NCBI GenBank assembly: GCA_950097015.1
Contig: CATNEN010000012.1
Coordinates: 2,604,001-2,668,000, forward strand
From: Macrostomum hystrix
Taxonomy: Eukaryota; Animalia; Platyhelminthes
DNA: 64,000 bases
Reading direction: 5' to 3'
Shown: positions 19,579-58,700 of the stretch, in pieces
Layout of the letters: each line of letters begins with the position of its first letter
Position numbering within the stretch: the stretch's first letter is position 1
Translations under genes and position numbers: made by a program
Notes under the pieces: generated by a model
The model's input: only the letters and a program-made list of their open reading frames with translations
What the model was told of the DNA's origin: nothing
Database searches by the model: none

Positions 19579-19751
19579 ATTTAGACCGCAGAAAAAACCA
19601 GGACACCGGTTCATTATGAAAAACATGCTTAAGAAAACAACTTAAGACATTACTTCAAGTAGTTTGTTTCTCAGGTAGTCGAAAAGATTTCTAGAACTCA
19701 GCATATACTCGTACATACTAATATCTCTCTAGAATCGCTCTGGAAGTTCAC

Positions 19752-34875: not shown

Positions 34876-35511
34876 TGTTTCGAATATTCTTATTCGAAAT
34901 GTTTAGATCGACACGCGGCAACTTGTTAGATATGGAGATAAGAACTGTCCCAGCGCTCTGCAATGCAGCTGTGTCGACTGACCGTCATCGAGACCACCCG
35001 AGACAGAACGAAAAGAAAAAATTGTCAATAAAAAGTGTCGCGCACAAAAATGCAGGATTTCTATATCATTGGCCGACGGAATTAACCTTATTGTGGGTCA
35101 GCTGCATAGATGGGGGGCCTTGAATTAGCGACCACGTTGCAATAAAACAGTCTAGAATGGACAGATAACGATCTACTTAAAAACAGACATGCGTATTTGA
35201 ATCCAGACACGACCATTTCATGTGTTGTAGAGAGAAATTTCGTTTTTTACACAGAATCGACTACGCTACAATGGAAAAATTGAGAATAAATGCTTGGTTT
35301 ATTATAGCTATGCAATTTTAGTCCGAAATCTTGTCTGCTGTTTATAAAAAATGGTTAAGTAACTTACTTTTCTTGAGAAAGTTTTTTCTTACGAATTGGA
35401 TACAAAGTCACGTTTCCTTTGCTTCGCCGACTGGGGAGTGAGGTTGCATGCATTGCAGCTTAGCAAACCCATTGTGAGTATCTAAACAGCTCGGGTTCGC
35501 CATTTGCTTGA

Positions 35512-36464: not shown

Positions 36465-37197
36465 TTTTAGTTATAGTTGCATATTTGTACTAATACGAGA
36501 GGTCGATTTGAGACATCATTTTTCCCTCGGGTTTTTCAGCCAGGGCAAGTTGAGGAGAATATCCTGCATGGTGGGATATTTGATTCGATGGCTGGGTGGG
36601 AAGCAAACAATGGAAGCTTTGCTGAGCTGCCAAGGACAAAAGAGCTGGTGCAGGCAGTGAGGCGTCTTCCATTTGTTGCACGCTCCGCTTGAAGAGGCTG
36701 CTGAAAGCACAGAAAGTGGAATATCTTCTGGAGCAGCTTTGAAGTTGGAAAAAACTGGATGCACGAATTTGAGATCCGCTGCAAATAGTAAACAGTTTCT
36801 CTATTTTTCTTGAAAGTCTGCTTTTACAGAACGCTGCTCTGTGCAAACAGATGGGCCTCACTCAGAGCATAGCCGTATTGTAGGGAATGAGAGGTGGGAC
36901 TTGTGCCTCATAGTATCAGATGGGCTAGAAACTTATGCATGCTTTTGATTCCATTACAATTCCATTTCATGGTTTCTAATCCAGCTGAAATTCTAACAAT
37001 GATTGACACAAAACTTGAATCCACAATGAATCATCACGGTTAGGTGGCAACACAAAATATTATCTTTGCTGCTTTCACACTGGAAAGATGCGAACAGCTG
37101 AAATAAGTAGATCAGCGGCTGAAACACTTTCGGCCCTCGAATTCTAATATTAGGCACTCGCGGAAGAGGACCTGAAAAAGGTAGACAAGGAAACAAT

Positions 37198-38300
37198 GTT
37201 AGATAATCAGACAATGGTAGATAATTAGACAATGGTAGATAATCAGACAATGGTAGATAATTAGACAATCGTAGATAATCAGACAATGGTAGATAATCAA
37301 ACAATGGTAGATAATTAGACAATGGTAGATAATCAAACAATGGTAGATAATTAGACAATGGTAGATCATTAGTCAATGGTAGGTAATCAGACAATGGTAG
37401 ACAATTAGACAATGGTAGATAATGAGACAATGGTAGATAATCAAACAATGGTAGATAATTAGACAATGGTAGATAATTAGACAATGGTAGGTAATCAGAC
37501 AATGGTAGATAATCAGACAATGGTAGATAATCAAACCATGGTAGATAATCAAACAATGGTAGATAATTAGACAATGGTAGGTAATTAGACAATGGTAGGT
37601 AATTAGACAATGGTAGATAATTAGACAATGGTAGGTAATTAGACAATGGTAGATAATTAGACAATGGTAGGTAATTAGACAATGGTAGGTAATTAGACAA
37701 TGGTAGATAATTAGACAATGGTAGATAATTAGACAATGGTAGATAATTAGACAATGGTAGATAATTAGACAATGGTAGGTAATTAGACAATGGTAGATAA
37801 TTAGACAATGGTAAATAATCAGACAATGGTAGATAATTAGACAATGGTAGGTAATCAGACAATGGTAGATAATTAGACAATGGTAGATAATTAGACAATG
37901 GTAGATAATTAGACAATGGTAGGTAATTAGACAATGGTAGGTAATCAGACAATGGTAGATAATTAGACAATGGTAGATAATCAGACAATGGTAGATAATG
38001 AGACAATCGTAGATAATTAGACAAAGGTAGATAATCAGACAATGGTAGATAATGAGACAAGGGTAGATAATCAGACAATGGCAGATAATCAGACAATGGT
38101 AGATAATGAGACAATCGTAGATAATCAGACAATGGTAGATAATCAGACAATGGTAGATAATCAGACAATGGTAGATAATTAGACAATGGTAGATAATTAG
38201 ACAATGGTAAATAATCTGACAAAGGTAGATAATGAGACAATGGTAGATAATTAGACAATGGTAGGTAATTAGACAATGCTAGATTCGAGTAATTAGGCAA
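37198..38300. repeat. 18-bp minisatellite (AGACAATGGTAGATAATT)n
   Basis: About 60 tandem units; produces the YLPLSN repeat ORF. Confidence 0.95.
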
Positions 38301-38843: not shown

Positions 38844-41800
38844 ATGATGGGAGATTCTCTCACATGCGGTATCAGATATTCCCTTCTGTTTGACACCAAC
38901 CAACCAGACACGCCGCTTTCCATTGCAGAGAACGTCACCGCACGATCGTTAAGGACATTGGGACAGAATATGGACGTCCGGGACGAGAGCTGGTTTTTCC
39001 AGGAAATGTCGCCACTATTGGCCACGGAGCTACTGAAGAAGATGACAAACAATGAGGGCGCTTTCCTGGTTCGAAGCTTCAAGAAGCGACTGGCTTTGTC
39101 CTATGTGTGAGTTGCCTGTCCTTCTTTGTTAGTTAATTTGGGTCAATTTCCTTGCGTTTTATTGTCTCCAGGCCGATTTTGAATAGTTGTTTTTGTATTG
39201 GTTGTTGTTTGTCAACAATTCCTAGTCTCTTGGTTGTTGTTTGTCAACAATTCCTAGTCTCTTGGTTGTTGTTTGTCAACAATTCCTAGTCTCTTGGTTG
39301 TTGTTTGTCAACAATTCCTAGTCTCTTGGTTGTTGTTTGTCAACAATTCCTAGTCTCTTGGTTGTTGTTTGTCAACAATTCCTAGTCTCTTGGTTGTTGT
39401 TTGTCAACAATTCCTAGTCTCTTGGTTGTTGTTTGTCAACAATTCCTAGTCTCTTGGTTGTTGTTTGTCAACCATTTCCAAGTCTCTTGGTTGTTGTTTG
39501 TCAACAATTCCTAGTCTCTTGGTTGTTGTTTGTCAACAATTCCTAGTCTCTTGGTTGTTGTTTGTCAACAATTCCTAGTCTCTTGGTTGTTGTTTGTCAA
39601 CAATTCCTAGTCTCTTGGTTGTTGTTTGTCAACCATTTCCAAGTCTCTTGGTTGTTGTTTGTCAACAATTCCTAGTCTCTTGGTTGTTGTTTGTCAACCA
39701 TTTCCAAGTCTCTTGGTTGTTGTTTGTCAACAATTCCTAGTCTCTTGGTTGTTGTTTCTCAACAATTCCTAGTCTCTTGGTTGTTGTTTGTCAACCATTT
39801 CCAAGTCTCTTGGTTGTTGTTTGTCAACAATTCCTAGTCTCTTGGTTGTTGTTTGTCAACAATTCCAAGTCTCTTGGTTGTTGTTTGTCAACAATTCCTA
39901 GTCTCTTGGTTGTTGTTTGTCAACAATTCCTAGTCTCTTGGTTGTTGTTTGTCAACAATTCCTAGTCTCTTGGTTGTTGTTTGTCAACAATTCCTAGTCT
40001 CTTGGTTGTTGTTTCTCAACAATTCCTAGTCTCTTGGTTGTTGTTTGTCAACAATTCCTAGTCTCTTGGTTGTTGTTTGTCAACAATTCCTAGTCTCTTG
40101 GTTGTTGTTTGTCAACAATTCCTAGTCTCTTAGTTGTTGTTTGTCAACAATTCCTAGTCTCTTGGTTGTTGTTTGTCAACAATTCCTAGTCTCTTGGTTG
40201 TTGTTTGTCAACAATTCCTAGTCTCTTGGTTGTTGTTTGTCAACAATTCCTAGTCTCTTGGTTGTTGTTTGTCAACAATTCCTAGTCTCTTGGTTGTTGT
40301 TTGTCAACAATTCCTAGTCTCTTGGTTGTTGTTTGTCAACAATTCCTAGTCTCTTGGTTGTTGTTTGTCAACAGTTACTAATATTCTATAAATTCGTTAT
40401 TAATTATTGTGTTAATTATGTAAAATCGCAACAAATTTAAATTTAGTCATTTGCCAACCCCTCAACCGGGTAGCAACATTAGTACTTGACTGAGCAATTT
40501 AAGCGTCAGGAACAAACTGCCACACGAAACAGACTGACAGTCCAGTGATTGGGTGCAAGGCCTATGTGTATGTGCAGCGGGCTGTTCCGCTTATCATATC
40601 TTAACGAGATCAGCTTTCGGACGCAATTATACAGGGCCGAAGAAAGTGATACGGGCAGCATCTTATGCCGCACTTTGGTCATCACCCACCCAGTGTCAGT
40701 TATCGGGACACCCTGCCGAATCATTGCTGCCTACTTTTTGGGCCATTAGTTAACAAAAGAAAAAGCAGCTTTTGGTTTATCGGATATTAGGCTGCAGGCA
40801 GTTGAATTATTAGTTGCTAGGGGAAAATCAGTGCTGCTTCGGATACGTTAACGGAGACTGTTCACTCCATGGTACTACTCGGCTAGTACCCACTTTACAG
40901 ATGGGTAAATTAAAGCAATTTGTTTCCTCCTGCGCCTCAATTCGAACTCCGGACCTTTCACTTAAGTGTCCGAAGCCTCCCCATCTACAAAACCATCTTC
41001 AAGATCTGTCATTCACTGTCAATCAATCCAACTCATCCCGCGCGATGCCTTCCCGAGCAGCTGGCAGCAGTCGGTGAAGCACAGCTGGATCAGCGTGGAT
41101 CCCGGTGGCACAAGCTGCTACCTGCAGCCGCAGGAGCGCTTCGACTGTGTGCAGGAGCTGGTGCAGCACTATGGCAGCACGCCTTGCAGCGGCCTGGCCG
41201 GCCTGCGCCTTCAGCGCTATCCCCTAGCCGAGGATGTTGAGAACTTCCTGCGACTGCCGCCCGCTGACATTGAGATCGGGTCCGATGGCCGCAGCTGCTC
41301 ACTGGTTAATCCGCTGACCGTGAGTGACTGGCTAATCCTTCGAGTTTTTGTCTCACTAATCCCTCAGATTGGTTAATCATTCGAGCATTTGTCTCACTAA
41401 TCCCTCAGATTGGTTAATCATTCGAGTTTTTGTCTCACTAATCCCTCAGATTGGTTAATCATTCGAGCATTTGTCTCACTAATCCCTCAGATTGGTTAAT
41501 CATTCGAGCATTTGTCTCACTAATCCCTCAGATTAGCTAATACTTCGAGTTTTTGTCTCACTAATCCCTCAGATTGGCTAATCCTTCGAGTTTTTGTCTC
41601 ACTAATCCCTCAGATTGGTTAATCATTCGAGTTTTTGTCTCACTAATCCCTCAGATTGGTTAATCATTCGAGTTTTTGTCTCACTAATCCCTCAGATTGG
41701 TTAATCATTCGAGTTTTTGTCTCACTAATCCCTCAGATTGGTTAATCATTCGAGTATTTGTCTCACTAATCCCTCAGATTGGTTAATCATTCGAGTATTT

Positions 41801-44800
41801 GTCTCACTAATCCCTCAGATTGGTTAATCATTCGAGCATTTGTCTCACTAATCCCTCAGATTGGTTAATCATTCGAGTTTTTGTCTCACTAATCCCTCAG
41901 ATTGGTTAATCATTCGAGTTTTTGTCTCACTAATCCCTCAGATTGGCTAATCCTTCGAGTTTTTGTCTCACTAATCCCTCAGATTGGTTAATCATTCGAG
42001 TTTTTGTCTCACTAATCCCTCAGATTGGTTAATCATTCGAGTTTTTGTCTCACTAATCCCTCAGATTGGCTAATCCTTCGAGTTTTTGTCTCACTAATCC
42101 CTCAGATTGGTTAATCATTCGAGCATTTGTCTCACTAATCCCTCAGATTGGTTAATCATTCGAGCATTTGTCTCACTAATCCCTCAGATTGGTTAATCAT
42201 TCGAGTATTTGTCTCAGTAATCCCTCAGATTGGCTAATCATTCGAGTATTTGTCTCACTAATCCCTCAGATTGGTTAATCATTCGAGTATTTGTCTCACT
42301 AATCCCTCAGATTGGTTAATCATTCGAGTATTTGTCTCACTAATCCCTCAGATTGGTTAATCATTCGAGTTTTTGTCTCACTAATCCCTCAGATTGGTTA
42401 ATCATTCGAGTTTTTGTCTCACTAATCCCTCAGATTGGTTAATCATTCGAGTATTTGTCTCACTAATCCCTCAGATTGGTTAATCATTCGAGTTTTTGTC
42501 TCACTAATCCCTCAGATTGGTTAATCATTCGAGCATTTGTCTCACTAATCCCTCAGATTGGTTAATCATTCGAGCATTTGTCTCACTAATCCCTCAGATT
42601 GGTTAATCATTCGAGTATTTGTCTCACTAATCCCTCAGATTGGTTAATCATTCGAGTATTTGTCTCACTAATCCCACAGATTGGTTAATCATTCGAGCAT
42701 TTGTCTCACTAATCCCTCAGATTGGTTAATCATTCGAGCATTTGTCTCACTAATCCCTCAGATTGGTTAATCATTCGAGTATTTGTCTCACTAATCCCTC
42801 AGATTGGTTAATCATTCGAGCATTTGTCTCAGTAATCCCTCAGATTGGCTAATCATTCGAGCATTTGTCTCAGTAATCCCTCAGATTGGCTAATCATTCG
42901 AGCATTTGTCTCAGTAATCCCTCAGATTGGCTAATCATTCGAGCATTTGTCTCAGTAATCCCTCAGATTGGTTAATCATTCGAGTATTTGTCTCACTAAT
43001 CCCTCAGATTGGTTAATCATTCGAGCATTTGTCTCACTAATACCTCAGATTGGTTAATCATTCGAGTATTTGTCTCACTAATCCCTCAGATTGGTTAATC
43101 ATTCGAGCATTTGTCTCACTAATCCCTCAGATTGGTTAATCATTCGAGTATTTGTCTCACTAATCCCTCAGATTGGTTAATCATTCGAGTATTTGTCTCA
43201 CTAATCCCTCAGATTGGTTAATCATTCGAGCATTTGTCTCACTAATCCCTCAGATTGGTTAATCATTCGAGCATTTGTCTCACTAATCCCTCAGATTGGT
43301 TAATCATTCGAGCATTTGTCTCACTAATCCCTCAGATTGGTTAATCATTCGAGTATTTGTCTCACTAATCCCTCAGATTGGTTAATCATTCGAGTATTTG
43401 TCTCACTAATCCCTCAGATTGGTTAATCATTCGAGTATTTGTCTCACTAATCCCTCAGATTGGTTAATCATTCGAGCATTTGTCTCACTAATCCCTCAGA
43501 TTGGTTAATCATTCGAGTTTTTGTCTCACTAATCCCTCAGATTGGTTAATCATTCGAGTTTTTGTCTCACTAATCCCTCAGATTGGTTAATCATTCGAGC
43601 ATTTGTCTCACTAATCCCTCAGATTGGTTAATCATTCGAGTATTTGTCTCACTAATCCCTCAAATTGGTTAATCATTCGAGTATTTGTCTCACTAATCCC
43701 TCAGATTGGTTAATCATTCGAGCATTTGTCTCACTAATCCCTCAGATTGGTTAATCATTCGAGTATTTGTCTCACTAATCCCTCAGATTGGTTAATCATT
43801 CGAGCATTTGTCTCACTAATCCCTCAGATTGGTTAATCATTCGAGTATTTGTCTCACTAATCCCTCAGATTGGTTAATCATTCGAGCATTTGTCTCACTA
43901 ATCCCTCAGATTGGTTAATCATTCGAGATTTTGTCTCACTAATCCCTCAGATTGGTTAATCATTCGAGCATTTGTCTCACTAATCCCTCAGATTGGTTAA
44001 TCATTCGAGCATTTGTCTCACTAATCCCTCAGATTGGTTAATCATTCGAGCATTTGTCTCACTAATCCCTCAGATTGGTTAATCATTCGAGCATTTGTCT
44101 CACTAATCCCTCAGATTGGTTAATCATTCGAGCATTTGTCTCACTAATCCCTCAGATTGGTTAATCATTCGAGTTTTTGTCTCACTAATCCCTCAGATTG
44201 GTTAATCATTCGAGCATTTGTCTCAGTAATCCCTCAGATTGGCTAATCATTCGAGCATTTGTCTCAGTAATCCCTCAGATTGGCTAATCATTCGAGCATT
44301 TGTCTCACTAATCCCTCAGATTGGTTAATCATTCGAGCATTTGTCTCACTAATCCCTCAGATTGGTTAATCATTCGAGCATTTGTCTCAGTAATCCCTCA
44401 GATTGGTTAATCATTCGAGCATTTGTCTCACTAATCCCTCAGATTGGTTAATCATTCGAGCATTTGTCTCACTAATCCCTCAGATTGGTTAATCATTCGA
44501 GTTTTTGTCTCACTAATCCCTCAGATTGGTTAATCATTCGAGTATTTGTCTCAGTAATCCCTCAGATTGGCTAATCATTCGAGCATTTGTCTCAGTAATC
44601 CCTCAGATTGGTTAATCATTCGAGTATTTGTCTCAGTAATCCCTCAGATTGGTTAATCATTCGAGCATTTGTCTCACTAATCCCTCAGATTGGTTAATCA
44701 TTCGAGCATTTGTCTCAGTAATCCCTCAGATTGGTTAATCATTCGAGCATTTGTCTCACTAATCCCTCAGATTGGTTAATCATTCGAGCATTTGTCTCAC

Positions 44801-47800
44801 TAATCCCTCAGATTGGTTAATCATTCGAGTTTTTGTCTCACTAATCCCTCAGATTGGCTAATCATTCGAGCATTTGTCTCAGTAATCCCTCAGATTGGCT
44901 AATCATTCGAGCATTTGTCTCAGTAATCCCTCAGATTGGTTAATCATTCGAGTATTTGTCTCACTAATCCCTCAGATTGGTTAATCATTCGAGCATTTGT
45001 CTCACTAATCCCTCAGATTGGTTAATCATTCGAGCATTTGTCTCACTAATACCTCAGATTGGTTAATCATTCGAGTATTTGTCTCACTAATCCCTCAGAT
45101 TGGTTAATCATTCGAGTATTTGTCTCACTAATCCCTCAGATTGGTTAATCATTCGAGCATTTGTCTCACTAATCCCTCAGATTGGTTAATCATTCGAGTA
45201 TTTGTCTCACTAATCCCTCAGATTGGTTAATCATTCGAGTATTTGTCTCACTAATCCCTCAGATTGGTTAATCATTCGAGCATTTGTCTCACTAATCCCT
45301 CAGATTGGTTAATCATTCGAGCATTTGTCTCACTAATCCCTCAGATTGGTTAATCATTCGAGTTTTTGTCTCACTAATCCCTCAGATTGGTTAATCATTC
45401 GAGTATTTGTCTCACTAATCCCTCAGATTGGTTAATCATTCGAGTATTTGTCTCACTAATCCCTCAGATTGGTTAATCATTCGAGTATTTGTCTCACTAA
45501 TCCCTCAGATTGGTTAATCATTCGAGTATTTGTCTCACTAATCCCTCAGATTGGTTAATCATTCGAGCATTTGTCTCACTAATCCCTCAGATTGGTTAAT
45601 CATTCGAGCATTTGTCTCACTAATCCCTCAGATTGGTTAATCATTCGAGTTTTTGTCTCACTAATCCCTCAGATTGGTTAATCATTCGAGTATTTGTCTC
45701 ACTAATCCCTCAGATTGGTTAATCATTCGAGCATTTGTCTCACTAATCCCTCAGATTGGTTAATCATTCGAGCATTTGTCTCACTAATCCCTCAGATTGG
45801 TTAATCATTCGAGTATTTGTCTCACTAATCCCTCAGATTGGTTAATCATTCGAGTATTTGTCTCACTAATCCCTCAGATTGGTTAATCATTCGAGTTTTT
45901 GTCTCACTAATCCCTCAGATTGGTTAATCATTCGAGCATTTGTCTCACTAATCCCTCAGATTGGTTAATCATTCGAGATTTTGTCTCACTAATCCCTCAG
46001 ATTGGTTAATCATTCGAGTATTTGTCTCACTAATCCCTCAGATTGGTTAATCATTCGAGTATTTGTCTCACTAATCCCTCAGATTGGTTAATCATTCGAG
46101 CATTTGTCTCACTAATCCCTCAGATTGGTTAATCATTCGAGTTTTTGTCTCACTAATCCCTCAGATTGGTTAATCATTCGAGTTTTTGTCTCACTAATCC
46201 CTCAGATTGGTTAATCATTCGAGTATTTGTCTCACTAATCCCTCAGATTGGTTAATCATTCGAGTATTTGTCTCACTAATCCCTCAAATTGGTTAATCAT
46301 TCGAGTATTTGTCTCACTAATCCCTCAGATTGGTTAATCATTCGAGCATTTGTCTCACTAATCCCTCAGATTGGTTAATCATTCGAGTATTTGTCTCACT
46401 AATCCCTCAGATTGGTTAATCATTCGAGCATTTGTCTCACTAATCCCTCAGATTGGTTAATCATTCGAGCATTTGTCTCACTAATCCCTCAGATTGGTTA
46501 ATCATTCGAGCATTTGTCTCACTAATCCCTCAGATTGGTTAATCATTCGAGCATTTGTCTCACTAATCCCTCAGATTGGTTAATCATTCGAGTATTTGTC
46601 TCACTAATCCCTCAGATTGGTTAATCATTCGAGTATTTGTCTCACTAATCCCTCAGATTGGTTAATCATTCGAGCATTTGTCTCACTAATCCCTCAGATT
46701 GGTTAATCATTCGAGCATTTGTCTCACTAATCCCTCAGATTGGTTAATCATTCGAGTTTTTGTCTCACTAATCCCTCAGATTGGTTAATCATTCGAGTAT
46801 TTGTCTCACTAATCCCTCAGATTGGTTAATCATTCGAGTTTTTGTCTCACTAATCCCTCAGATTGGTTAATCATTCGAGTTTTGTCTCACTAATCCCTCA
46901 GATTGGTTAATAATTCGAGCATTTGTCTCACTAATCCCTCAGATTGGTTAATCATTCGAGTATTTGTCTCACTAATCCCTCAGATTGGTTAATCATTCGA
47001 GTATTTGTCTCACTAATCCCTCAGATTGGTTAATCATTCGAGTTTTGTCTCACTAATCCCTCAGATTGGTTAATCATTCGAGTTTTTGTCTCACTAATCC
47101 CTCAGATTGGTTAATCATTCGAGTATTTGTCTCACTAATCCCTCAGATTGGTTAATCATTCGAGTATTTGTCTCACTAATCCCTCAGATTGGTTAATCCT
47201 TCGAGCATTTGTCTCACTAATCCCTCAGATTGGTTAATCATTCGAGCATTTGTCTCACTAATCCCTCAGATTGGTTAATCATTCGAGCATTTGTCTCACT
47301 AATCCCTCAGATTGGTTAATCATTCGAGTATTTGTCTCACTAATCCCTCAGATTGGTTAATCATTCGAGCATTTGTCTCATTAATACCTCAGAAACTCCA
47401 CATCAAACTCAGATTCGAAAATTAGTCATTGATTTTGAGCAGGATGCGAGTCTTTAAACTCCCCGAGGTCGCCCACTTGAAGAACTAATATTTTCTGGGC
47501 CAGCCAGCCAGAATAACGTGCCCCTTAGGCAAGAAAACAAAAAACTATATTTTTCGAAACGCAAACAGGGCGAGCACCACTGTTTCGCTGACACGACTTG
47601 GGCCTAAAATGCATTACAATATCGATTGTTGCTACTGCTAGCTTGAGGATAGAGGAGAGACTGAGGTTTGAGGCTCCTCCCACCCCCCGAGGCTGGGGCG
47701 CGGCCATGAACCGCACTTCGTTTTTAGCGCGCTTTTCAAAAACTCCAGCATTTCGCTTGCATTTGATAGACACTTTTCTGTTGTGTGAGAAACTGAAGGA

Positions 47801-48962
47801 GCGTCTCAAATCCGGAACAATAACACACGCTGCCGCACCCCCTGACTCAAGCAGACGTGAGAGAGAAGAGAAACTGGGAAGGCTAGGGGCGCCTCATGAA
47901 ACATTCAGAGAAGAGATCTCCCAAAAATTCACGCGGTAAGACTGGCTGTTGGAAAGGTGGCAAATGTTGAGCAGACATTTGGGGAGGCAGGGAGAGAAAG
48001 TACCACTGGGGTAGACGGGGCAGAGAGTGAGAGTGAGTGTTAGCAAAAGGTGTTGGGAGGAATAGAAGCGGCCTGTTAGCTGGATACAAAACTACTGCCC
48101 AATATTAGGATCGAAAATGTCTAACAAAAGGCGGCCAAGGTCGGCAATGCCCTGTGGCGCAACCTCATACAGGGATTGAAGCCATAAAGTACCGTAGTTT
48201 TTGCTGCGCATCTTAAATTCATGCCCCAGACTAGATGGTTGCCATACCTCTCTGTATCTCCCTGCCTCCCAGATCCCAAATCCCATGCTCATCCCCAATG
48301 CGTGAAATGGGTTGCTTAGCTGTGAAGGCTGAATTGTTTAAAATAAAACTACGATTACGATCGTAAATTGTCCCGCTGACTGCTCCTGTACATTGTTAGC
48401 CTGGGCAATTAATAGTGAATTTAAGAACAGGACGAGTAAGTTACTTCGTTAGATTTAGATTTTAACTCACTTTACTCACTTTATTGCATCAGGAGAGAGA
48501 GAGTCGCTGCCTCGTGTGAGTAAATTTGCGGCAAATACTTTCTAAAACTTGAGACATGGAGAGATGGGATAAGACAGAGCCCCAGAGTCAGTGTACGAGT
48601 CAGTTTTACACATGCATAAAATACTTTGTTTAGACGAAGTCACTTGATACGGACGGTTGCAGAACCTTCTCCGTGTTACGGTCTGTTGCACGCGGTCGGG
48701 TTCACACGCATCACATTAATTGTAGAGACAAAAATAGCACCAAGGTCAAGAGGAAATTGTAGTAAACCCCGCGATATAATTCTATGATAGTCTTCTCATA
48801 TTGCTGCTTTCGGAGAGATCGGATCTACACAGAAGAATCGTGCGAGTGTGTGTTGTGGAGGCACCGCAGAAGCAATTGTAAGAGAACTAAAGTGTTGTAA
48901 AGTTGTTCGTCAGCTAGTCTCCCTCTCTCATGATCTGCACCTCTTCACCTCGTGCCTGTAGT

Positions 48963-49010
<48 letters not shown>

Positions 49011-52000
49011 TGCAAGGGGAGGGAAGGACTCCATACTGACACTTCAGCTTCGGGTGGTTGAAGTGAATTCGCAGCGAGTGCTCACACCACCACTCTCGCT
49101 GTCCCGCCTCCATGCAGCTCTCAGCTCGCTGATCTATATACTTTCACTTGTCACCCCCGGCCTTGAGTCTGAACTCTTTTAGCCTTGCATGTGGGACTCA
49201 GTCCTTGACTGTTGAGTGGCTGGCAACCCAGATATTTCATTACCCTCTTCCCAATGTAGGAACCTGTGCATTCATTATGTTAAATTATCCTTAAATTCAT
49301 TTCGTTTTAGGCGGCGTTTCACATCCCGAATTTTACATTCCTCAAATTTCGCAACCCCAAAATTCACATCCACAAATTTCACATCTCCGAAATTTCACGA
49401 CCCTAAAATTTACTTACTTTAAATTTCACATCCTCAAATTTTCACACCCCAAGATTTTTCTTATAAAATTGATATTCCATTTGTTACACACTTGTCAACC
49501 GCACCTGCTCGCAGACTCTGGAACACGGTCGGTTCGGCCAGGAGGCTATTAGCGCCATCAGCCGGCGTTACAACTCGCACGAGGTCACCGCCTGCTTGAG
49601 GAATGCCGCCTCAATTCTGATGTGAGTAGATGGGCTTGCTTAACAATGGCTAAACACCTATGACTGACAGTCTAGGAAGGAAATCTTGCCTTTCACTTTC
49701 ACTCAAAGCTGTGCCCGACTCTCGCCCAATAACCCTCCGCGACCCACCGGTGACACTCCAGAGCCCTACTTAATGCATTGTCACCGCTTGTCAAAATTGA
49801 CATGACTGGTACAAGCCCGACACCTCCCCACTCTCAGTCGGACTCAGCTCTCACATCACATCCGCTCGCAAGTGCGCGATTATTAACAGCCTGTCTGGCG
49901 CTCTGCGGGGTTCTCAGTTTAGTTAAAGTTGAGCTCGTCAATTTCTAACCTGTCAATCAGCGACTGAAAGCGAAGAGCGGTTGGCATGTTAATTGCGCGG
50001 CGGCCTCTCACACACTCACACACACTCACACCCACTGTCGCTATGACTTCATGCGGTGGGCGCTTAAGCAATTAACTTAATAACCATTGGCTTCTGCGTA
50101 CAACCCCGACACTTCCAAACTGGAACAGTACCTCGTACTGACTAAAAAAGCGAAGTGTAAGGAGTTAGAGAGGTCTCCACTTGTGCTCAACCTGAGCTCA
50201 ACTCGGCTCTTCTGATTAGAAAGAAAGCATTAAAAAAAGAGTTGATGATTTGAGTGCTTTGCTATGGAAGCAATCACTCAAAGCTACTTGTTGTTACCTG
50301 TTTTGAGTTAGTTTGCTTGCTTTCGTAACTAGCGGTCTGTTTTAATTGACGTGACGCGCGGTTACAATGTTATTTAAAACATCTTTTCATATCAGAAAGA
50401 TGGATGGGAAAGCTAGGGCACCCATACGATAAAAATATAATTAAGCGTGAATAGCTTTTATCAGCACCGATAGTAATTGAATACTCTAAGTAGTATGTTA
50501 TTATAAATAATTACATTTAGAAAATTGGATAACTTTCGCAGTATCTGGAACTGCAAATTATTGCAGTATTACAATAGTTTTTACATTCCTGACCCCCCAA
50601 CTATCGGTCATTATCATTTTAAAAGTAATTATCCTCCTAATCCTCACAGATCAGTCATTATCCTCCTAATCCTCACAGATCACTGATTATCCTCCTGATC
50701 CTCATTGATCACTGATTATCCTCCTAATCCTCATTGATCACTGATTATCCTCCTAATCCTCATTGATCACTGATTATCCTCCTAATCCTCATTGATCACT
50801 GATTATCCTCCTAATCCTCACAGATCACTGATTATCCTCCTAATCCTCACAGATCACTGATTATCCTCCTAATCCTCATTGATCACTGATTATCCTCCTG
50901 ATCCTCATTGATCACTGATTATCCTCCTAATCCTCATTGATCACTGATTATCCTCCTAATCCTCATTGATCACTGATTATCCTCCTAATCCTCACAGATC
51001 ACTGATTATCCTCCTAATCCTCACAGATCACTGATTATCCTCCTAATCCTCATTGATCACTGATTATCCTCCTAATCCTCATTGATCACTGATTATCCTC
51101 CTGATCCTAATTGATCACTGATTATCCTCCTGATCCTCACAGATCACTGATTATCCTCCTAATCCTCACAGATCACTGATTATCCTCCTAATCCTCACAG
51201 ATCACTGATTATCCTCCTAATCCTCATTGATCACTGATTATCCTCCTGATCCTCATTGATCACTGATTATCCTCCTGATCCTCATTGATCACTGAATATC
51301 CTCCTGTATTCCCTCACACCTCGCAGGCTTCTGGACCACGCCAACCTGATCAAGCTGGTTGGTCTGCACCACACTCCCGGCCACCCAATGTCTGGCTACT
51401 GTCTGATCACCGAGCACATCAATTGTGGCAGTCTGCGTCAGTTTGTGCACAAGCAAGGCGAGCGCCTCCTCAGAGACTGGGAGATTCTCATCAGCTTCGG
51501 CGGTCAGGTGGCCAACGCTACGGCCTACCTGCATCGCAAGGGAGTGGTGCACAATGAACTGGTAAATAACTCAGAATTATAATTCAGTTCGTCAAGTTCT
51601 AACTCAGTCACACCCGCCTTGCCCCAGGTCCTGGACAATTGCCTCCTGGAGCGATCCGATCGATTCACTGTGAAACTCTCCGGCTTTGAGTTTTCCCGCT
51701 TCGAAGACTCGAGCCCGCGACCTCTTGTGCACCTGATGTGGCGCAAGTACTGCCGGGTGGCGCCAGCTTGTCCGGAGATTGCCACAGGTGCTAAACAGCT
51801 GCCCACCTGCGCCTCAGACGTTTGGGCGCTGGGGCTGCTGGTTTGGTCGCTGTTCTCACGCAGCTGTCACCCCAGCGAGTGTCCGGGAGCCCAGCCGCCT
51901 CCTCTGTCGCTGAACTCTCCTCTGCTGCCGAAGGAGCTGACAGCGGCCTTGGATCACCTCATCCGGTCCTGCCTTCACAGGGTGAGCTCCAGTGCGCTCT

Positions 52001-53559
52001 TAATTAGGTCAGGTGTGCGCTGAGGGATTTTGTGGATTGATCCCAGCGAAAATTCTGAGCACGAAAGCACACAGCGTCCTGATCCACCAAATGTCATGTT
52101 CCATAACGCAAAAAAATAAGAATAAATAGTAATACTAATAATTCCAGGAGGGCTTCGGGCAGTGGGACATCATTTGGTGACACTAGACCCGCAGCCAGCG
52201 AGGAGGCAATTCTGCCCATTTCGCTGACTCTGCCCATTTCGTGAGCACACACGCACACAGATACCGTACACAGGCACACGCACACACAGGTGTGTACACC
52301 TGCCTTGACTTTCTAATCGTCAGGTAGTGTGCACTCTCACTGTGCCTTGGAGGTTGGCCCTTAAGGGTGTAAATTGCACAATAAGCCACCAAGCCTTCTC
52401 TCCGCGGCTGCGCCCCAAATGAATGTGGCCTCGCCGTGGAATCGAACTTAGGCACCGTGGTGCGAGAGGCAAACGCGTTGACCGCTTTGCCACTCAACCT
52501 TCGTCATGTTCCATTCCTATTCTCATATTTTCAGATGCCCCAGCTGAGAATATCGTCCGTGGAGGTGGGCAAACAGCTGCGCAATCTGATCGATTTTCGC
52601 AGCTACCTGAACGCCAAATACGGTGAGTTTGTCAAAGTCAATCTGTCTTCTCAGCGCCTCCTTAACTACCATGAAAATAAACGAAAACTTCAGCAGACCA
52701 GAGCTACAGCTCAGGTGTCTCCTCAGCCGACCTCGAGCCGTTCGGAATCGGCAACGGCATCGAACTGTCTTCGTCTTCGTTGACAACAACTACACCGCCG
52801 CAGTCAGCCGATGACGGCGGCAGCGCGGGCGGACTTGGCGGCGGTGTAACGCCAAGTAGGAAACCGTCGCGCCGTCTTGGCCTCTTCCGCTCCAAGAAGT
52901 GGAAGTCGGCTAGTTTAGCGGATGCCTCTGAAGGCGTCGTTAGTGGCAACGGCAGCAGCGGCGGCGGCGGAGGCTTCAAGCGGCTGCTGTTATTCTCACG
53001 CAGCTCCGGTGGACGGAAGGCCAGTCGGGACGCAAATTACTACGAGAATGCGGACAACGGAGGTGGCAAAGATGTCGTGAGGACCACAGCAGCGACGTCC
53101 GCCGTCCAGAAGTCGAAGAGCGCGCACCAGTTGGCGCAGCCCGAACAGCGTCGCCGCCGGAGCTCAGAAACTCTAATGACGTCATCGCTGACAGTGGCTG
53201 CGGCTTCAGCAGTGCCAGACGAGCAGCTGCTGCAGACGGAGCGGCGGTGCCAGCGGCTCCTGGACCAGCTGGGGCAGTTGCGGGCCCGCTGTGATTCTGA
53301 GCGGGACCGTCGGGTGGCCGCCGAGACAGAGCTTCGGTCGATACGACAGGCCTACGAGCTACGGCTGGCTGATGCCGACTCGGCTGTCAAGCAGTGGCGA
53401 CAGCAGCTGCTGGCTGAGCGATCCGACATGCGCGACCAGCTTGACAGCCTGCGCCGAGAGAACCTGCGACTTCGGCAGACGCAGTCGACAGCCGGCCGCT
53501 CCCAGGACAGCGGCATCGCGTGCGGCGACTGCCCGTCCAGACGGCTGGAGTCGGACTGA
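38844..53559 (+). CDS. SH2 domain + tyrosine-kinase-fold pseudokinase + C-terminal coiled coil, 7 exons, 723 aa
   Basis: Exons are 38844-39106, 41061-41319, 49515-49621, 51327-51561, 51628-51981, 52535-52622 and 52694-53559. All introns are GT-AG and phase-compatible (2,0,2,0,0,1), totalling 2172 nt. SH2 motifs: WFFQEMS...GAFLVRSF...LALSYV..SVKH...FDCVQELVQHY. Kinase motifs: LDHANLIKLVG, ITEHINCGSL, QVANATAYLH..GVVHNEL..N, VKLSGFE, SDVWALG, CLHRMPQLR. Confidence 0.85.
39198..40375. repeat. 32-bp minisatellite (TTGGTTGTTGTTTGTCAACAATTCCTAGTCTC)n in kinase intron 1
   Basis: About 36 tandem units, each with an internal TTGTTG...CAACAA inverted repeat. Confidence 0.95.
41328..47392. repeat. 6-kb 41-bp satellite (GATTGGTTAATCATTCGAGCATTTGTCTCACTAATCCCTCA)n in kinase intron 2
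   Basis: About 148 units, starting about 8 nt after the donor at 41320. Rare variants recur at about 2.0-2.6 kb spacing. Confidence 0.98.
48962..49009. repeat. (GCA)n trinucleotide microsatellite
   Basis: About 16 units, intronic. Confidence 0.95.
50625..51305. repeat. 29-bp minisatellite (CCTAATCCTCA[TT/CA]GATCACTGATTATCCT)n in kinase intron 3
   Basis: About 23 units, ending about 20 nt before the acceptor at 51326. Confidence 0.95.
52115..52495 (-). mobile_element. tRNA-derived SINE, family B (well-preserved copy) in kinase intron 5
   Basis: The minus strand reads GAGTGGCAAAGCGG (A box)...AAGTTCGATTCC (B box). The body is shared with 2095-2372. Confidence 0.8.
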
Positions 53560-55754: not shown

Positions 55755-58700
55755 TCATTCCGCCGCCGCCTCCGTGGCGTCGGCTGACGGTCCGCCGTCG
55801 TGATTTCCGTCCTCGGTGGAGCCGACAACCCGGGGACCTTGGTCGGTGATGACCACCTTGTTGGTGGGCTTGATGCGCTGGTACTCCAAGCCGTACTGCG
55901 GGCCCTTGTAGAGCTCCTGGCGCTCGTCGAAACCGCGATGGTCCTTCACCCGCTCGTACTGGCTGTACATGATGATCTTCGGCTGCGGTTGAAGGTTGAG
56001 GTTAATCAGATATTATTGATTGAAAGGGGTGAGATAATATATGGCAGAGATCAGACAGGGGAGAAACGAGGCACGGAGAGATCAGATAAGCGTGAGGTGA
56101 GACACGAGAGAGATGAGACACGGGAGAGATGAGACAGGGGAGAGACGAGACGAGAGAGAGAGATGAGACACGGGAGAGATGAGACACGGGAGAGATGAGA
56201 CACGGGAGAGATGAGACACGGGAGAGATGAGACACGGGAGAGATGAGACACGGGAGAGATGAGACACGGGAGAGATGAGACACGGGAGAGATGAGACACG
56301 GGAGAGATGAGACACGGGAGAGATTAGACACGGGAGAGATGAGACACGGGAGAGATGAGACACGGGAGAGATGAGACACGGGAGAGATGAGACACGGGAG
56401 AGATGAGACACGGGAGAGATGAGACACGGGAGAGATGAGACACGGGAGAGATGAGACAGGGGAGAGACGAGACGAGAGAGAGAGATGAGACACGGGAGAG
56501 ATGAGACACGGGAGAGATGAGACACGGGAGAGATGAGACACGGGAGAGATGAGACACGGGAGAGATGAGACACGGGAGAGATGAGACACGGGAGAGATGA
56601 GACACGGGAGAGATGAGACACGGGAGAGATGAGACACGGGAGAGACACTTAGAAATCTGATATACTCAAAACTTTCCGAGGATTTCTGTATCAGTACTTT
56701 CAATCTGATTAAGCAATAAAAGTACATACCGGGATTCCACTCAGCTTCTCCGCAAGAGGATCTCTAAATTAAATTAAATTTTTCATGAATTAATGTCTTA
56801 ACTGTCTCAAAAAAGATTCCCCTTAATATCGAGTTGACAGGCAGACTCACGGAGCAGTTTGCACCTTGCTGCTGGAACCCTTCTGGCCTCTGAAGTAGTG
56901 TTTAGTGGAAAAAGTGATCATTATCTTGAGTCTTGCGCTGATTAAATGCAATGCGCGGGCACTCACCCCTTCTGCATCTGACGGGCTCGCTCGGACAGCT
57001 CCAGAATCTTAAATTAAATTTTTTTAATTTTTAGTGTTGGATTTTTACAAGCCTACGAGTAAGGTATTTACTTGCATAATTAATACTGATAATAGTTGAT
57101 TACACCTGCCACAATTCGGCCAGATGTGCACCCGACAGCAGCAAGTGCGCGGTGCATCTGCAGGCTGCGTACCCACCCACCCTCAATCACCCCTGCTTGG
57201 GGTATAAGGTTGGATTGGAGTCAGGAATCGAACCCCCGACATTCAAGACGTTAGTCCGATGCTCTAACCTCTAGGCTACAACCCCCTAGAATTTGCATGC
57301 TGTTTTATTCGAAGGCCGACGCTCGCGTTGCGAAGCTTGGCAAGTTTGGTCGATAAAACTATTCTAAAGATAAAAATATCTCCAAAACTATACAACCAAT
57401 TGCCATGAATATCCAGAACGCGGGATAAAAACTTCCGCGCTATCCGATGAAACAACTTTTAGAATCACAAAATCCAGAATCTCGGCATCGTCGAAATATT
57501 CAATATTCTGGTGGCCAAAGCCAACAATATAAGACTAAATTATGTGCTATCATTGTTGATTATATTGTATTGTAACAGACAGTTTAACAAACAGACTCGC
57601 CTCCATGTTCTGCGTCTTGAACCGCTGCTCGAGGTCATATTTGTCGCCCTCCAGGCCGTAGATGCGCTTGAACAGCTCCTTAGCCTTCTCCTGCAGCTGC
57701 TGCTCTCCGAAACCGTCGATATTTAACGGCTGCACCCGCTGCTCCAGGGTGGCCTTCTTCTCAGCTTCCAGCTGCTCCTTGCTCTTGCCCTGCTTGGACT
57801 CGTCCAAGCCGCCAATACCGGCCTGTGGCGGTTAGCGTGTTAAGAGGGTGACCTTCACTCAGTGAGTGCTGTGAGTGATTGTTGTGAGTGATTGTTGTGA
57901 GTGCAGTGAGTGTTGATGTACTGAATGGCCTTGGGCAGTGAGTGTTGATGTACTGAGTGGACCATGGGCAGTGAGTGTTGATGTACTGAGTGGACCATGG
58001 GCAGTGAGTGTTGATGTACTGAGTGGACCATGGGCAGTGAGTGTTGATGTACTGAGTGGACCATGGGCAGTGAGTGTTGATGTACTGATTGACCTTGGGG
58101 CAGTGAGTGTTGATGTACTGATTGATCTTGGAAGTAAGTGCTCATGTACTGAATGAGCTTGGGCAGAGAGTGTACTGCCGATAAAAGTTGCGCTTCTGTT
58201 ATAAGTTTCACATTTTAATCAGTAACAGCATCAGCGCCACCTTCTTGTAAAGCTTTGCAATAGAAATAAATTTACGAAAAAGCAGGGCAGGGCTCTACCC
58301 TGCTTAGCCCCCGGACAAATAAGAGTGAGGATGGCTGTACCCTGCTTAGCCCCCTGACAAATAAGAGTGAGGATGGCTGTACCCTGCTTAGCCCCCTGAC
58401 AAATAAGAGTGAGGATGGCTGTACCCTGCTTAGCCCCCTGACAAATAAGAGTGAGTGATGGCTGTACTCTGCTTAGCCTCCGGACAAATAAGAGTGAGGA
58501 TGGCTGTACCCTGCTTAGCCCCCTGACAAATAAGAGTGAGGATGGCTGTACCCTGCTTAGCCCCCTGACAAATAAGAGTGAGGATGGCTCTACTCTGCTT
58601 AGCCCCCTGACAAATAAGAGTGAGTGATGGCTGTACCCTGCTTAGCCCCCTGACAAATAAGAGTGAGGATGGTTGTACCCTGCTTAACCCCCTGACAAAT

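What the first reader, a model, noticed from the sequence alone, without database searches (positions are those of the whole stretch)
38844..53559. Intact SH2-pseudokinase-coiled-coil gene with all catalytic motifs dead and an MLKL-like GFE
Seven phase-compatible exons give an open 723-aa frame, so this looks like a maintained gene rather than a pseudogene. The SH2 keeps the phosphotyrosine-binding FLVR arginine and the beta-D His. The kinase fold has no recognisable VAIK lysine (EAISAIS), the alpha-C Glu position reads N (CLRNAA), HRD is HNE, and DFG is GFE (VKLSGFEF). The human necroptosis pseudokinase MLKL has the same DFG>GFE change (VKLAGFEL), probably by convergence. An SH2-pseudokinase followed by a Ser/Gly linker and a long coiled coil does not match Src, Tec, Abl, Fes/Fer, Syk or JAK layouts. 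It could be a phosphotyrosine-gated scaffold or oligomerising switch.
Basis: partly seen in the sequence, partly recalled or inferred. Interest (0 to 1): 0.75.

Follow-up and report, generated by a model that had tools for sequence, protein, structure and literature searches.

The report
Flatworm SH2-linked dead kinase gene
This is a real, strongly conserved flatworm gene for a protein that can probably still dock onto phosphotyrosine but has lost every residue a kinase needs for catalysis; it belongs to a small undescribed family also seen in a ribbon worm, and its likeness to the cell-death protein MLKL is a coincidence.

Summary
Seven GT-AG exons on the + strand (38970-53559) encode an SH2 domain, a tyrosine-kinase-type fold, a disordered Ser/Gly-rich linker and one 92-residue C-terminal helix. 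The kinase fold lacks the beta3 Lys and the alphaC Glu, and reads HNE for HRD and GFE for DFG.

- The first 42 codons (from 38844) are probably 5'UTR, so the protein is about 680 aa, not 723.
- GFE is not conserved. It is GLE in Macrostomum lignano, GLL in the paralogues and GFH in Lineus. Only the Asp-to-Gly change is shared, so the MLKL likeness is accidental.

The gene is maintained:
- An orthologue exists in M. lignano (PAA84360.1, 671 aa, annotated only as hypothetical). It has the same splice junctions and conserved neighbours.
- dN/dS is 0.04-0.05 in the SH2 and kinase exons and 0.15 in the tail, at dS about 1.07.
- Two near-identical paralogous copies in the same genome share all seven exons and their phases.

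A nemertean protein (Lineus longissimus XP_064631962.1) shares the SH2, HNEL pseudokinase and coiled-coil layout, so the family may be old in Spiralia. I found no paper on it.

Most likely function (inferred): a non-catalytic, phosphotyrosine-docking scaffold that pairs through its coiled coil. First-stage notes flagged similar genes elsewhere in this genome, probably the paralogues.

The parts
38970..39106 (+). Exon 1: probable start codon (MDVRDESWFF) and the N-terminal half of the SH2 domain, including the FLVR Arg codon at 39072-39074. The in-frame ATG at 38844 lies upstream but is probably 5'UTR.
   Evidence: Pfam SH2 positions 1-29. The M. lignano orthologue and the paralogue both start here and have in-frame stops upstream. 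96% aa identity to M. lignano.
41061..41319 (+). Exon 2: C-terminal half of the SH2 domain (VKHSW betaD His, ELVQHY), the SH2-kinase linker, and a degenerate region where beta1, the Gly-loop and beta2 would lie.
   Evidence: Pfam SH2 positions 46-77. The junction LALSYV|WQQ matches the orthologue P0028 and the paralogue phase. The AF2 model has pLDDT below 50 for the matching residues 119-141.
49515..49621 (+). Exon 3: N-lobe beta3 to alphaC. The beta3 Lys is replaced by Ser in AISAIS (49551-49553). The alphaC Glu position is Asn or Ala in RNAA (49602-49607).
   Evidence: The orthologue aligns with MET AVK and FLTEG. 60% identical to the paralogue exon with the same phase. 89% identical to M. 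lignano.
51327..51561 (+). Exon 4: beta4-beta5, hinge, alphaD-alphaE and the start of the catalytic loop. HRD reads HNE (51550-51558).
   Evidence: Pfam PK_Tyr_Ser-Thr 7.8e-11, profile positions 58-128. The best PDB match is the pseudokinase ErbB3. dN/dS 0.024.
51628..51981 (+). Exon 5: the catalytic-loop Asn is kept (LVLDN). DFG reads GFE (51682-51690). Also covers the activation segment (APE reads CPE) and alphaF (SDVWALG) to alphaH.
   Evidence: Pfam PK_Tyr 6.7e-5. MET/RON alignment. The HNEL|VLDN junction is confirmed by database proteins P0001 and P0028.
52535..52622 (+). Exon 6: the last kinase helix (alphaI region, MPQLRIS...).
   Evidence: Junctions CLH[RS]|MPQL and AKY|DQS match P0001 and P0028. 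63% identical to the paralogue exon with the same phase.
52697..53559 (+). Exon 7: about 170 residues of disordered Ser/Gly/Thr-rich linker with a conserved basic motif FRSKKWKS (52885-52908), then the coiled-coil helix, a short Cys-containing end and the TGA stop (53557-53559).
   Evidence: The acceptor at 52697 follows from the orthologue (DQS[YF]SSGVSSADLEPFG). No Pfam hit and no word-search hit. dN/dS 0.149. Motif conservation is shown in alignment A3.
53218..53493 (+). Predicted single long alpha-helix (tail residues 174-265), the candidate coiled-coil dimerisation or oligomerisation element.
   Evidence: AF2 gives helix 174-265 with pLDDT 95-98. Heptad a/d hydrophobic periodicity holds a constant register over about residues 200-255. 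37% identical to the paralogue's helix.
39198..40380 (.). 32-bp minisatellite (37 copies) filling intron 1.
   Evidence: Tandem Repeats Finder.
41329..47393 (.). 41-bp minisatellite (148 copies, 6.1 kb) starting 10 bp after the exon 2 donor and filling most of intron 2.
   Evidence: Tandem Repeats Finder.
50628..51305 (.). 29-bp minisatellite (23 copies) in intron 3, ending 21 bp before the exon 4 acceptor.
   Evidence: Tandem Repeats Finder.

Best explanation
The locus is an expressed, selectively maintained gene of a macrostomid flatworm. It encodes a stand-alone SH2-pseudokinase-coiled-coil protein of about 680 aa, descended from a cytoplasmic SH2-tyrosine kinase.

Shown:
- the exon structure
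- the SH2 with its phosphotyrosine-binding Arg and His
- a tyrosine-kinase-type fold with a well-preserved C-lobe and a degraded N-lobe
- loss of the beta3 Lys, the alphaC Glu, the HRD Arg and Asp, and the DFG Asp and Gly
- a disordered linker and a 92-residue C-terminal helix
- strong purifying selection on every part

Inferred mechanism: the protein does not phosphorylate anything. Its SH2 docks on tyrosine-phosphorylated partners. The dead kinase domain serves as a protein-interaction or allosteric surface. The C-terminal helix pairs or bundles copies. Together they act as a dimeric or oligomeric phosphotyrosine-dependent scaffold. The conserved basic and Ser-rich linker motifs (FRSKKWKS, RRRRSSE) are candidate regulatory or phosphorylation sites.
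For: - Gene model: GT-AG sites and an open frame. Every junction is reproduced in the M. lignano protein PAA84360.1 (P0028). That record's annotation is RNA-seq-derived (PMC5730564). An independent UniProt fragment, P0001, reproduces the E4-E7 junctions.
- Orthology: 87-96% aa identity in the domain exons E1-E5 and 83% in E6, plus conserved flanking genes.
- Selection: Nei-Gojobori dN/dS is 0.041 (SH2), 0.050 (kinase) and 0.149 (tail) at dS about 1.07.
- Paralogues on C24 and C13 have the same seven-exon layout and phases, and a different dead DFG (GLL).
- Domains: full-length orthologue SH2 9e-12 and PK_Tyr 2.2e-28. The FLVR Arg and betaD His align with PLC-gamma and Grb2 SH2 domains. Catalytic positions are taken from the MET alignment.
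- Structure: in AF2 the SH2 and C-lobe are confident. Foldseek top hits are the Csk, Abl, Src and Fes SH2-kinase structures. The tail is disordered, then a single helix with pLDDT 95-98 and heptad periodicity.
- Depth: Lineus longissimus XP_064631962.1 aligns colinearly (29% over 390 aa, E 6e-44). It shares HNEL and the Asp-to-Gly change at DFG, and has coiled-coil-like tail segments. It groups with the flatworm protein in a tree (96/97).
Against: - No biochemical, expression or phenotype data exist for this species. Transcription is inferred from the M. lignano annotation.
- The N-lobe model has low confidence (pLDDT below 50 for residues 119-141). Whether any nucleotide can bind is therefore open.
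- The SH2 has lost the alphaA Arg, so phosphotyrosine affinity is unproven.
- 'Coiled coil' rests on a monomer helix prediction and a home-made heptad score, not on an oligomer model.
- The Lineus link joins two long branches and could partly reflect long-branch attraction.
- dS near 1 is close to saturation, so omega values are approximate.
Confidence: 0.6

Rival explanations
1. It is an allosteric partner or decoy for one particular active SH2-tyrosine kinase. The dead kinase domain would heterodimerise with, or compete against, a live relative, as HER3 does with EGFR/HER2 or JAK JH2 does with JH1. In this reading it is not a general scaffold.
For: The exon 4 region matches the pseudokinase ErbB3 and the JAK/TYK2 domains best among solved structures. 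The C-lobe, including alphaF to alphaI, is the best conserved part (dN/dS 0.02-0.06). The family keeps the SH2-kinase unit of the Src-module and Fes kinases.
Against: No partner kinase is identified. The PDB similarities are weak (E about 1e-4) and not family-specific. The conserved coiled coil and linker motifs are not needed for this model.
Confidence: 0.2
2. It is an atypical but active kinase that uses non-canonical residues, as WNK or CASK do. Glu in HNE would serve as the catalytic base.
For: The HRD Asp is replaced conservatively by Glu. The catalytic-loop Asn is kept (LVLDN). The paralogues still carry HCD with the Asp. A Gly-x-x-Gly-like HGRFG stretch exists in exon 3.
Against: Four separate catalytic elements are missing at once: the beta3 Lys, the alphaC Glu, the HRD Arg/Asp and the DFG Asp. 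The DFG Asp is Gly in every family member seen. The N-lobe matches no kinase profile upstream of beta3 and models poorly.
Confidence: 0.07
3. It is a decaying pseudogene or a gene-model artefact, with exons missed or wrongly joined.
For: Introns are filled with minisatellites, which often confuse gene models. Single exons give only weak Pfam scores. No RNA from this species was examined.
Against: There is an open frame with no stops in two species at dS about 1, with dN/dS of 0.04-0.15. Identical junctions occur in two independent M. lignano protein records. The same exon phases occur in paralogues at 40-70% aa identity, exon by exon. Synteny is conserved.
Confidence: 0.03

Closest known systems
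Macrostomum lignano PAA84360.1 / UniProt A0A267GEA2 (BOX15_Mlig000806g1, 'hypothetical protein', auto-named 'Tyrosine-protein kinase')
   Same: It is the orthologue. The junctions and domain order are the same, and the HNEL, FRSKKWKS and coiled-coil elements are all present. Amino-acid identity is 87-96% in the domain exons E1-E5, and the neighbouring genes are conserved.
   Different: DFG position reads GLE, not GFE. It is 671 aa, and its tail is 77% identical over aligned positions. It is uncharacterised, and I found no paper on it.
Lineus longissimus XP_064631962.1 / XP_064631961.1 (uncharacterized LOC135490620; Nemertea)
   Same: It has an SH2 followed directly by a tyrosine-kinase-type pseudokinase with HNEL, Asp-to-Gly at DFG, ARFE after it, and SDVWA.G. 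A long tail carries coiled-coil-like segments. The alignment is colinear at 29% identity, E 6e-44. About three intron positions coincide.
   Different: It is 1200 aa with a much longer and unalignable tail. It reads GFH at DFG and has an extra N-terminal region of about 80 aa. The relationship rests on two long branches.
Cytoplasmic SH2-tyrosine kinases (Abl, Tec/Btk, Src, Csk, Fes)
   Same: The SH2 lies immediately N-terminal to a tyrosine-kinase-type fold. These are the best full-length sequence matches in the PDB (Abl 8e-16) and the top Foldseek hits (Csk, Abl, Src, Fes, E about 1e-21).
   Different: There is no SH3, PH, F-BAR or F-actin-binding domain. All catalytic motifs are lost. The coiled coil is C-terminal, whereas Fes/Fer have theirs N-terminal. 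Identity is only 20-25%.
JAK JH2 pseudokinase domain
   Same: It is a tyrosine-kinase-group pseudokinase placed after an SH2-type domain. JAK2 and TYK2 appear among the weak PDB matches to exon 4.
   Different: There is no FERM domain and no second, active kinase domain. From established knowledge, JH2 keeps the beta3 Lys and binds ATP, and here the Lys is absent.
MLKL
   Same: It is a pseudokinase with Gly-Phe-Glu at the DFG position whose action depends on oligomerisation (PMC6013482).
   Different: MLKL is a TKL-group protein with an N-terminal four-helix bundle, keeps the VAIK Lys, and conserves GFE among its orthologues. Here GFE is species-specific (GLE, GLL or GFH in relatives). There is no four-helix bundle, and no MLKL chain appears in the 60 best of the 141 PDB sequence matches or the 50 Foldseek matches listed.
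PEAK1 / Pragmin (SgK269 / SgK223) pseudokinase scaffolds
   Same: This is a functional analogy from general knowledge only: catalytically dead kinase folds that dimerise through flanking helices and organise phosphotyrosine signalling.
   Different: They have no SH2 of their own and instead recruit SH2 proteins. No sequence relationship was detected here, and none was tested directly.

Membership tests
Protein kinase fold, tyrosine-kinase type (Pfam PF07714) | Significant match to the PK_Tyr_Ser-Thr profile across the domain | tested here: met
   Window exon 4 scores 42.2 bits (cut-off 23.1). Exon 5 scores 22.8 bits, just under the cut-off. The full orthologue scores 99.7 bits over profile positions 32-258.
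Catalytically active protein kinase | beta3 Lys (VAIK), alphaC Glu, HRD Asp and DFG Asp all present | tested here: not met
   By alignment to MET and RON and by direct reading, these positions are Ser, Asn or Ala, HNE and GFE. The same holds in the orthologue.
SH2 domain (PF00017), phosphotyrosine-binding competent | SH2 profile match, with the betaB5 Arg (FLVR) and the betaD4 His | tested here: met
   The orthologue scores 45.4 bits (cut-off 21). The window exons match profile positions 1-29 and 46-77. The Arg and His align with PLC-gamma1 and Grb2 SH2 domains. The alphaA Arg is lost. Binding itself was not tested.
MLKL family | N-terminal four-helix bundle and brace, a TKL-type pseudokinase, and a GFE conserved among orthologues | tested here: not met
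   The N-terminus is an SH2. The best matches are tyrosine kinases. GFE is replaced by GLE, GLL or GFH in relatives.
JAK family | FERM, SH2-like, JH2 and JH1 in one chain | tested here: not met
   Only an SH2 and one kinase-like domain are found in the orthologue. The protein starts at the SH2.
Src-module kinases (Src, Abl, Tec, Csk) | SH3-SH2-kinase unit with an active kinase | tested here: not met
   No SH3 hit in the window exons or the orthologue. The catalytic motifs are lost.
Fes/Fer | N-terminal F-BAR/coiled coil, then an SH2 and an active kinase | tested here: not met
   There is no N-terminal extension. The coiled coil is C-terminal. The kinase is dead.
Proposed SH2-HNEL pseudokinase-coiled-coil family (Macrostomum plus Lineus) | An SH2 directly followed by a tyrosine-kinase-type pseudokinase with DFG Asp changed to Gly, then a disordered linker and a C-terminal coiled coil | tested here: met
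   The window gene, the M. lignano orthologue, the C24/C13 paralogues and the Lineus protein all show this layout. The family is defined here and is not a curated one.

The most novel reading that the evidence does not exclude
This gene represents an ancient, so far unrecognised spiralian family of stand-alone SH2-pseudokinase-coiled-coil proteins. The family would have lost catalysis (DFG Asp to Gly, HRD to HNE) before flatworms and nemerteans split. It has since been kept as a phosphotyrosine-gated oligomeric switch, which would make it a tenth-or-so 'cytoplasmic tyrosine kinase family' that is purely non-catalytic.
Probability: 0.4. Interest if true: 0.6.

Novelty: new variant of a known kind. 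Interest (0 to 1): 0.45.

Why it matters
Pseudokinases are now seen as signalling switches and scaffolds. Outside the JAK JH2 domain, however, there is no described case of a phosphotyrosine-reading SH2 fused to a dead tyrosine-kinase fold as a free-standing protein.

A family kept under strong constraint in a transgenesis- and RNAi-ready flatworm model (Macrostomum lignano), and apparently shared with nemerteans, offers a tractable system. It could show what a kinase fold does once catalysis is gone, and how phosphotyrosine signalling was rewired in Spiralia.

It is not a surprise at the level of principle. Lineage-specific pseudokinases are common, and this gene is already present, uncharacterised, in public annotation.

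Tried and rejected
- Word-index protein search with the exon 7 tail (candidates of 152-483 aa) found nothing. The tail also has no Pfam hit, so its relatives outside Macrostomum remain unknown.
- Word search with the M. lignano orthologue (residues 1-400) returned only one weak hit. That hit is an active CARD-SH2-kinase (P0043, 26% identity) and not a family member.
- Word search with the Lineus protein returned only generic Tec, Abl and receptor kinases.
- The all-against-all representative search used the exon 5 profile. In 1.84 billion representatives it found only two strong hits, both M. lignano, plus Lineus at 3e-5. The other hits down to 1e-3 that I checked (P0005, P0006, P0007, P0010, P0012, P0015, P0022, P0023) were ordinary or multi-domain kinases, and the remaining weak hits were not examined.
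- Sequence matches to solved structures are too weak and too mixed (MET/RON, ErbB3, LIMK, JAK2, Abl, Btk, Csk) to place the domain in a tyrosine-kinase subfamily. Foldseek does not discriminate either.
- dN/dS between the C24 and C13 paralogue copies was abandoned. They are about 98% identical, introns included.
- I first read EVTAC as the VAIK equivalent. I dropped that in favour of AISAIS after the MET and Lineus alignments. The exact alphaC Glu equivalent (Asn or the following Ala) stays ambiguous by one residue.
- Literature searches for a described SH2-pseudokinase in flatworms or Spiralia found nothing relevant.
- The joined spliced model of this window was not sent to any search or fold tool. 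Searches went exon by exon, by reference, and the database orthologue P0028 served as the full-length proxy. One local script concatenated the exon coordinates only to check frame and length.
- The contig is not human.


Full report
**What is there**

The window is eukaryotic DNA, G000 contig C12, from a 220-Mb assembly. It is packed with minisatellites.

Between 38.8 and 53.6 kb on the + strand lie seven open blocks. Each is bounded by canonical AG acceptors and GT donors.

Scanned exon by exon, by reference, they give these Pfam results:
- E1: SH2 profile positions 1-29.
- E2: SH2 profile positions 46-77.
- E4: PK_Tyr_Ser-Thr positions 58-128 (E 7.8e-11).
- E5: PK_Tyr_Ser-Thr positions 131-205 (E 6.7e-5).
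- E3, E6 and E7: nothing.

- FLVR, with the Arg codon at 39072-39074.
- VKHSW.
- AISAIS.
- CLRNAA.
- HNE at 51550-51558.
- VKLSGFEF, with GFE at 51682-51690.

**Refining the gene model**

The profile search of 1.84 billion representatives, using exon 5, returned only two strong hits. Both are from Macrostomum lignano. One of them sits in the same 90% cluster as a full-length record: PAA84360.1 / A0A267GEA2, 671 aa, 'hypothetical protein BOX15_Mlig000806g1' (P0028).

That protein reproduces every junction I had inferred and corrects three details:
- E1/E2 is LALSYV|WQQ, so E1 ends at 39106 and E2 starts at 41061.
- E7 begins 30 nt earlier, at 52697 (DQS[YF]SSGVSSADLEPFG).
- Translation starts at MDVRDESWFF, which is ATG 38970.

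Both M. lignano and the paralogue have in-frame stops there. The product is therefore about 680 aa, or 722 if counted from 38844.

The NIVC annotation holding PAA84360.1 was built from RNA-seq-guided transcript assemblies (PMC5730564). The orthologue is therefore very probably transcribed and spliced as modelled. An independent UniProt fragment (A0A1I8JD51, P0001) shows the same E4-E7 junctions.

P0028 served as the full-length proxy. One search joined the exons locally, for a frame check only.

**Is it maintained?**

The M. lignano locus (L009) is orthologous to the window gene:
- The exons are 83-96% identical at the protein level in E1-E6, and 77% over aligned positions in the tail.
- A troponin-like gene lies downstream on the opposite strand in both species (window 55791-56906).
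- An upstream coding block is also shared (window 11678-11966).

Exon-by-exon Nei-Gojobori estimates give dS about 1.07. Omega is 0.041 for the SH2 exons, 0.050 for the kinase exons and 0.149 for the tail. dS is near saturation, so the numbers are rough. Omega is still far below 1 in every exon, and neither species has a stop codon. The pseudogene reading is excluded.

**Paralogues**

The same genome carries two further copies, at C24:131184-141503 and C13:804052-816145. They are about 98% identical to each other, introns included. That suggests a recent duplication or haplotigs.

Exon by exon they are 40-70% identical to the window gene. They have the same seven exons and the same intron phases, plus one extra intron in the tail.

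They are dead in a different way:
- DFG reads GLL.
- HRD reads HCD, so the Asp is kept.
- A Glu follows the alphaC Asn (RNEA).

They keep FLVR, the linker motif FRSKKWKS and a 37%-identical coiled-coil helix. Two first-stage notes on other pieces of this genome (s1-085170 and s1-344317) describe SH2-pseudokinase genes. These are probably the same paralogues.

**Catalytic status**

The orthologue aligns to MET, and exon 5 aligns to RON and MET. These alignments give the following:
- The beta3 Lys falls on Ser (AIS in the window, AVS in M. lignano).
- The alphaC Glu falls on Asn. Counting back without a gap from the H-x-N motif, it falls instead on the next residue, Ala.
- HRD is HNE.
- DFG is GFE.
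- The catalytic-loop Asn is kept (LVLDN).
- APE is reduced to CPE.

Nothing upstream of beta3 matches the kinase profile (Pfam starts at profile position 32).

An AF2 model of P0028:1-400 is confident for the SH2 and the C-lobe. It is poor for residues 119-170 (pLDDT 34-61), and there is only a vestigial helix where alphaC should be. The alignment behind the model is shallow, so this is suggestive only.

Foldseek places the model with the Csk, Abl, Src, Fes, Hck and ZAP-70 SH2-kinase structures (E 1e-21 to 1e-17, 20-25% identity). The ancestor was therefore a cytoplasmic SH2-tyrosine kinase, but no subfamily can be named.

**The MLKL point**

MLKL does carry GFE in place of DFG, and conserves it among its orthologues (PMC6013482). 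In this family the triplet varies:

| Protein | Residues at the DFG position |
|---|---|
| Window gene | GFE |
| M. lignano orthologue | GLE |
| C24/C13 paralogues | GLL |
| Lineus | GFH |

Only the Asp-to-Gly change is common to all. MLKL also keeps its VAIK Lys and has a four-helix bundle, both absent here. The resemblance is a one-species coincidence.

**SH2**

The orthologue's SH2 scores 45 bits. It aligns best with the PLC-gamma1 C-terminal SH2 and with Grb2 (E 3e-9 to 1e-5). The FLVR Arg and the betaD His sit on their counterparts, while the alphaA Arg is lost. The Arg is kept in the window gene, the orthologue, the paralogues and Lineus. Phosphotyrosine binding is plausible but untested.

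**Tail**

Exon 7 has no Pfam hit and no database relatives in the length range that could be searched.

Its first 170 or so residues are rich in Ser, Gly, Thr, Pro and Ala, and AF2 gives them pLDDT below 50. Several islands within this stretch are conserved between species and paralogues: SRRLG[LF]FRSKKWKS, GFKRLL.FSRSS, YYENAD and RRRRSSE.

Residues 174-265 (window 53218-53493) form one helix with pLDDT 95-98. Its hydrophobic a/d heptad pattern holds a constant register over about 55 residues. This is consistent with a dimeric or higher coiled coil. The oligomeric state itself is not shown.

**Depth of the family**

Among the weak hits of the representative search was Lineus longissimus XP_064631962.1 (Nemertea, 1200 aa, 'uncharacterized'). 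Several features tie it to the flatworm gene:
- It has an SH2 (residues 89-160) followed by a PK_Tyr domain (210-444).
- It aligns colinearly with the flatworm orthologue over 390 residues (29% identity, E 6e-44).
- It shares several short motifs: G[IV]VHNEL, DNC, VK[VL].G, ARFE[DE], SDVWA.G and PQ[LI]R.
- Its tail contains coiled-coil-like stretches.
- In a small tree the two proteins pair with 96/97 support. Both are very long branches, so attraction cannot be excluded.
- About three of the six flatworm intron positions coincide with Lineus exon boundaries (after S[YF][VM] in the SH2, after LM in alphaC-beta4, and after HNEL). Such positions may be general to tyrosine kinases.

I put the odds that this is one ancient, already-dead family at about 0.4-0.5.

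No other member was found. However, the three word searches and the single profile search were constrained by exon-sized queries and by the length window. Absence elsewhere in Spiralia is therefore not established.

**How it most likely works**

Shown:
- A selectively maintained protein combining an SH2 that looks competent to bind phosphotyrosine with a kinase fold.
- That fold has a well-conserved C-lobe and no catalytic residues.
- A flexible linker with conserved basic and Ser-rich motifs.
- A long C-terminal helix.

Inferred:
- It is a non-catalytic adaptor.
- It is recruited to tyrosine-phosphorylated partners through the SH2.
- It presents the pseudokinase C-lobe as an interaction or allosteric surface.
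- It is made bivalent or multivalent by the coiled coil.

Confidence in this reading is 0.6.

The main rival (0.2) is a narrower role as an allosteric partner or decoy of one active tyrosine kinase, in the manner of HER3 or JAK JH2. Residual non-canonical catalysis (0.07) is unlikely because four elements are missing together. A pseudogene or artefact (0.03) is essentially excluded.

**Novelty and score**

The gene is present in public annotation, but only as a hypothetical protein. Six literature searches found no description of an SH2-pseudokinase-coiled-coil family.

It is best called a new variant of a known kind: a pseudokinase offshoot of the cytoplasmic SH2-tyrosine kinases. A pseudokinase specialist would find it worth a look, especially because M. 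lignano allows RNAi and transgenesis. Lineage-specific dead kinases are common, though, and nothing here overturns a principle.

Interest: 0.45.

Noticed in passing
window 19753-28529, 31039-34878, 30021-31064, 17577-18811, 37193-38284, 8858-9501, 56046-56645 and others: The window is unusually rich in long minisatellite arrays, with units of 16-48 bp. The largest are 8.8 kb (24/48-bp unit, 96% matches) and 3.8 kb (23-bp unit). They create spurious giant ORFs, such as a 2924-aa ORF at 19748-28522 (-). They also account for most of the 27-kb expansion between this gene and its upstream neighbour, relative to M. lignano.
   Followed up: partly
window 55791-56906 (-): There is a conserved coding block, 81-100% identical by tblastx to the gene downstream of the M. 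lignano orthologue. That M. lignano gene carries a Pfam Troponin hit. The block is a syntenic neighbour on the opposite strand.
   Followed up: partly
window 11678-11966: There is a conserved coding block, 68-83% identical by tblastx to the 3 kb upstream of the M. lignano orthologue. It is an unidentified upstream neighbour gene.
   Followed up: no
L005+L007 (G000:C24:128000-147999) and L006+L008 (G000:C13:801000-820999): The two paralogue copies are about 98% identical across exons, introns and minisatellites. C13 is a contig of only 0.92 Mb, so one copy may be an uncollapsed haplotype rather than a true duplicate. These paralogues keep the HRD Asp (HCD) and a Glu next to the alphaC Asn, so they are less degraded than the window gene.
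   Followed up: partly
protein P0043 (634 aa, unnamed; sources NCBI, Logan, ENA): This protein combines a precomputed CARD hit (PF00619), an SH2 and an apparently active tyrosine kinase (HRDVAARN, DFG). It is an unusual death-fold-SH2-kinase layout from an unidentified organism. It surfaced as the only word-search hit of the M. lignano orthologue.
   Followed up: no
window 52885-52908 and 53149-53169: Two short basic motifs in the disordered linker are conserved. FRSKKWKS is identical in M. lignano and in the paralogues. RRRRSSE is conserved in M. lignano. They may be phosphorylation, 14-3-3 or membrane-binding sites.
   Followed up: no
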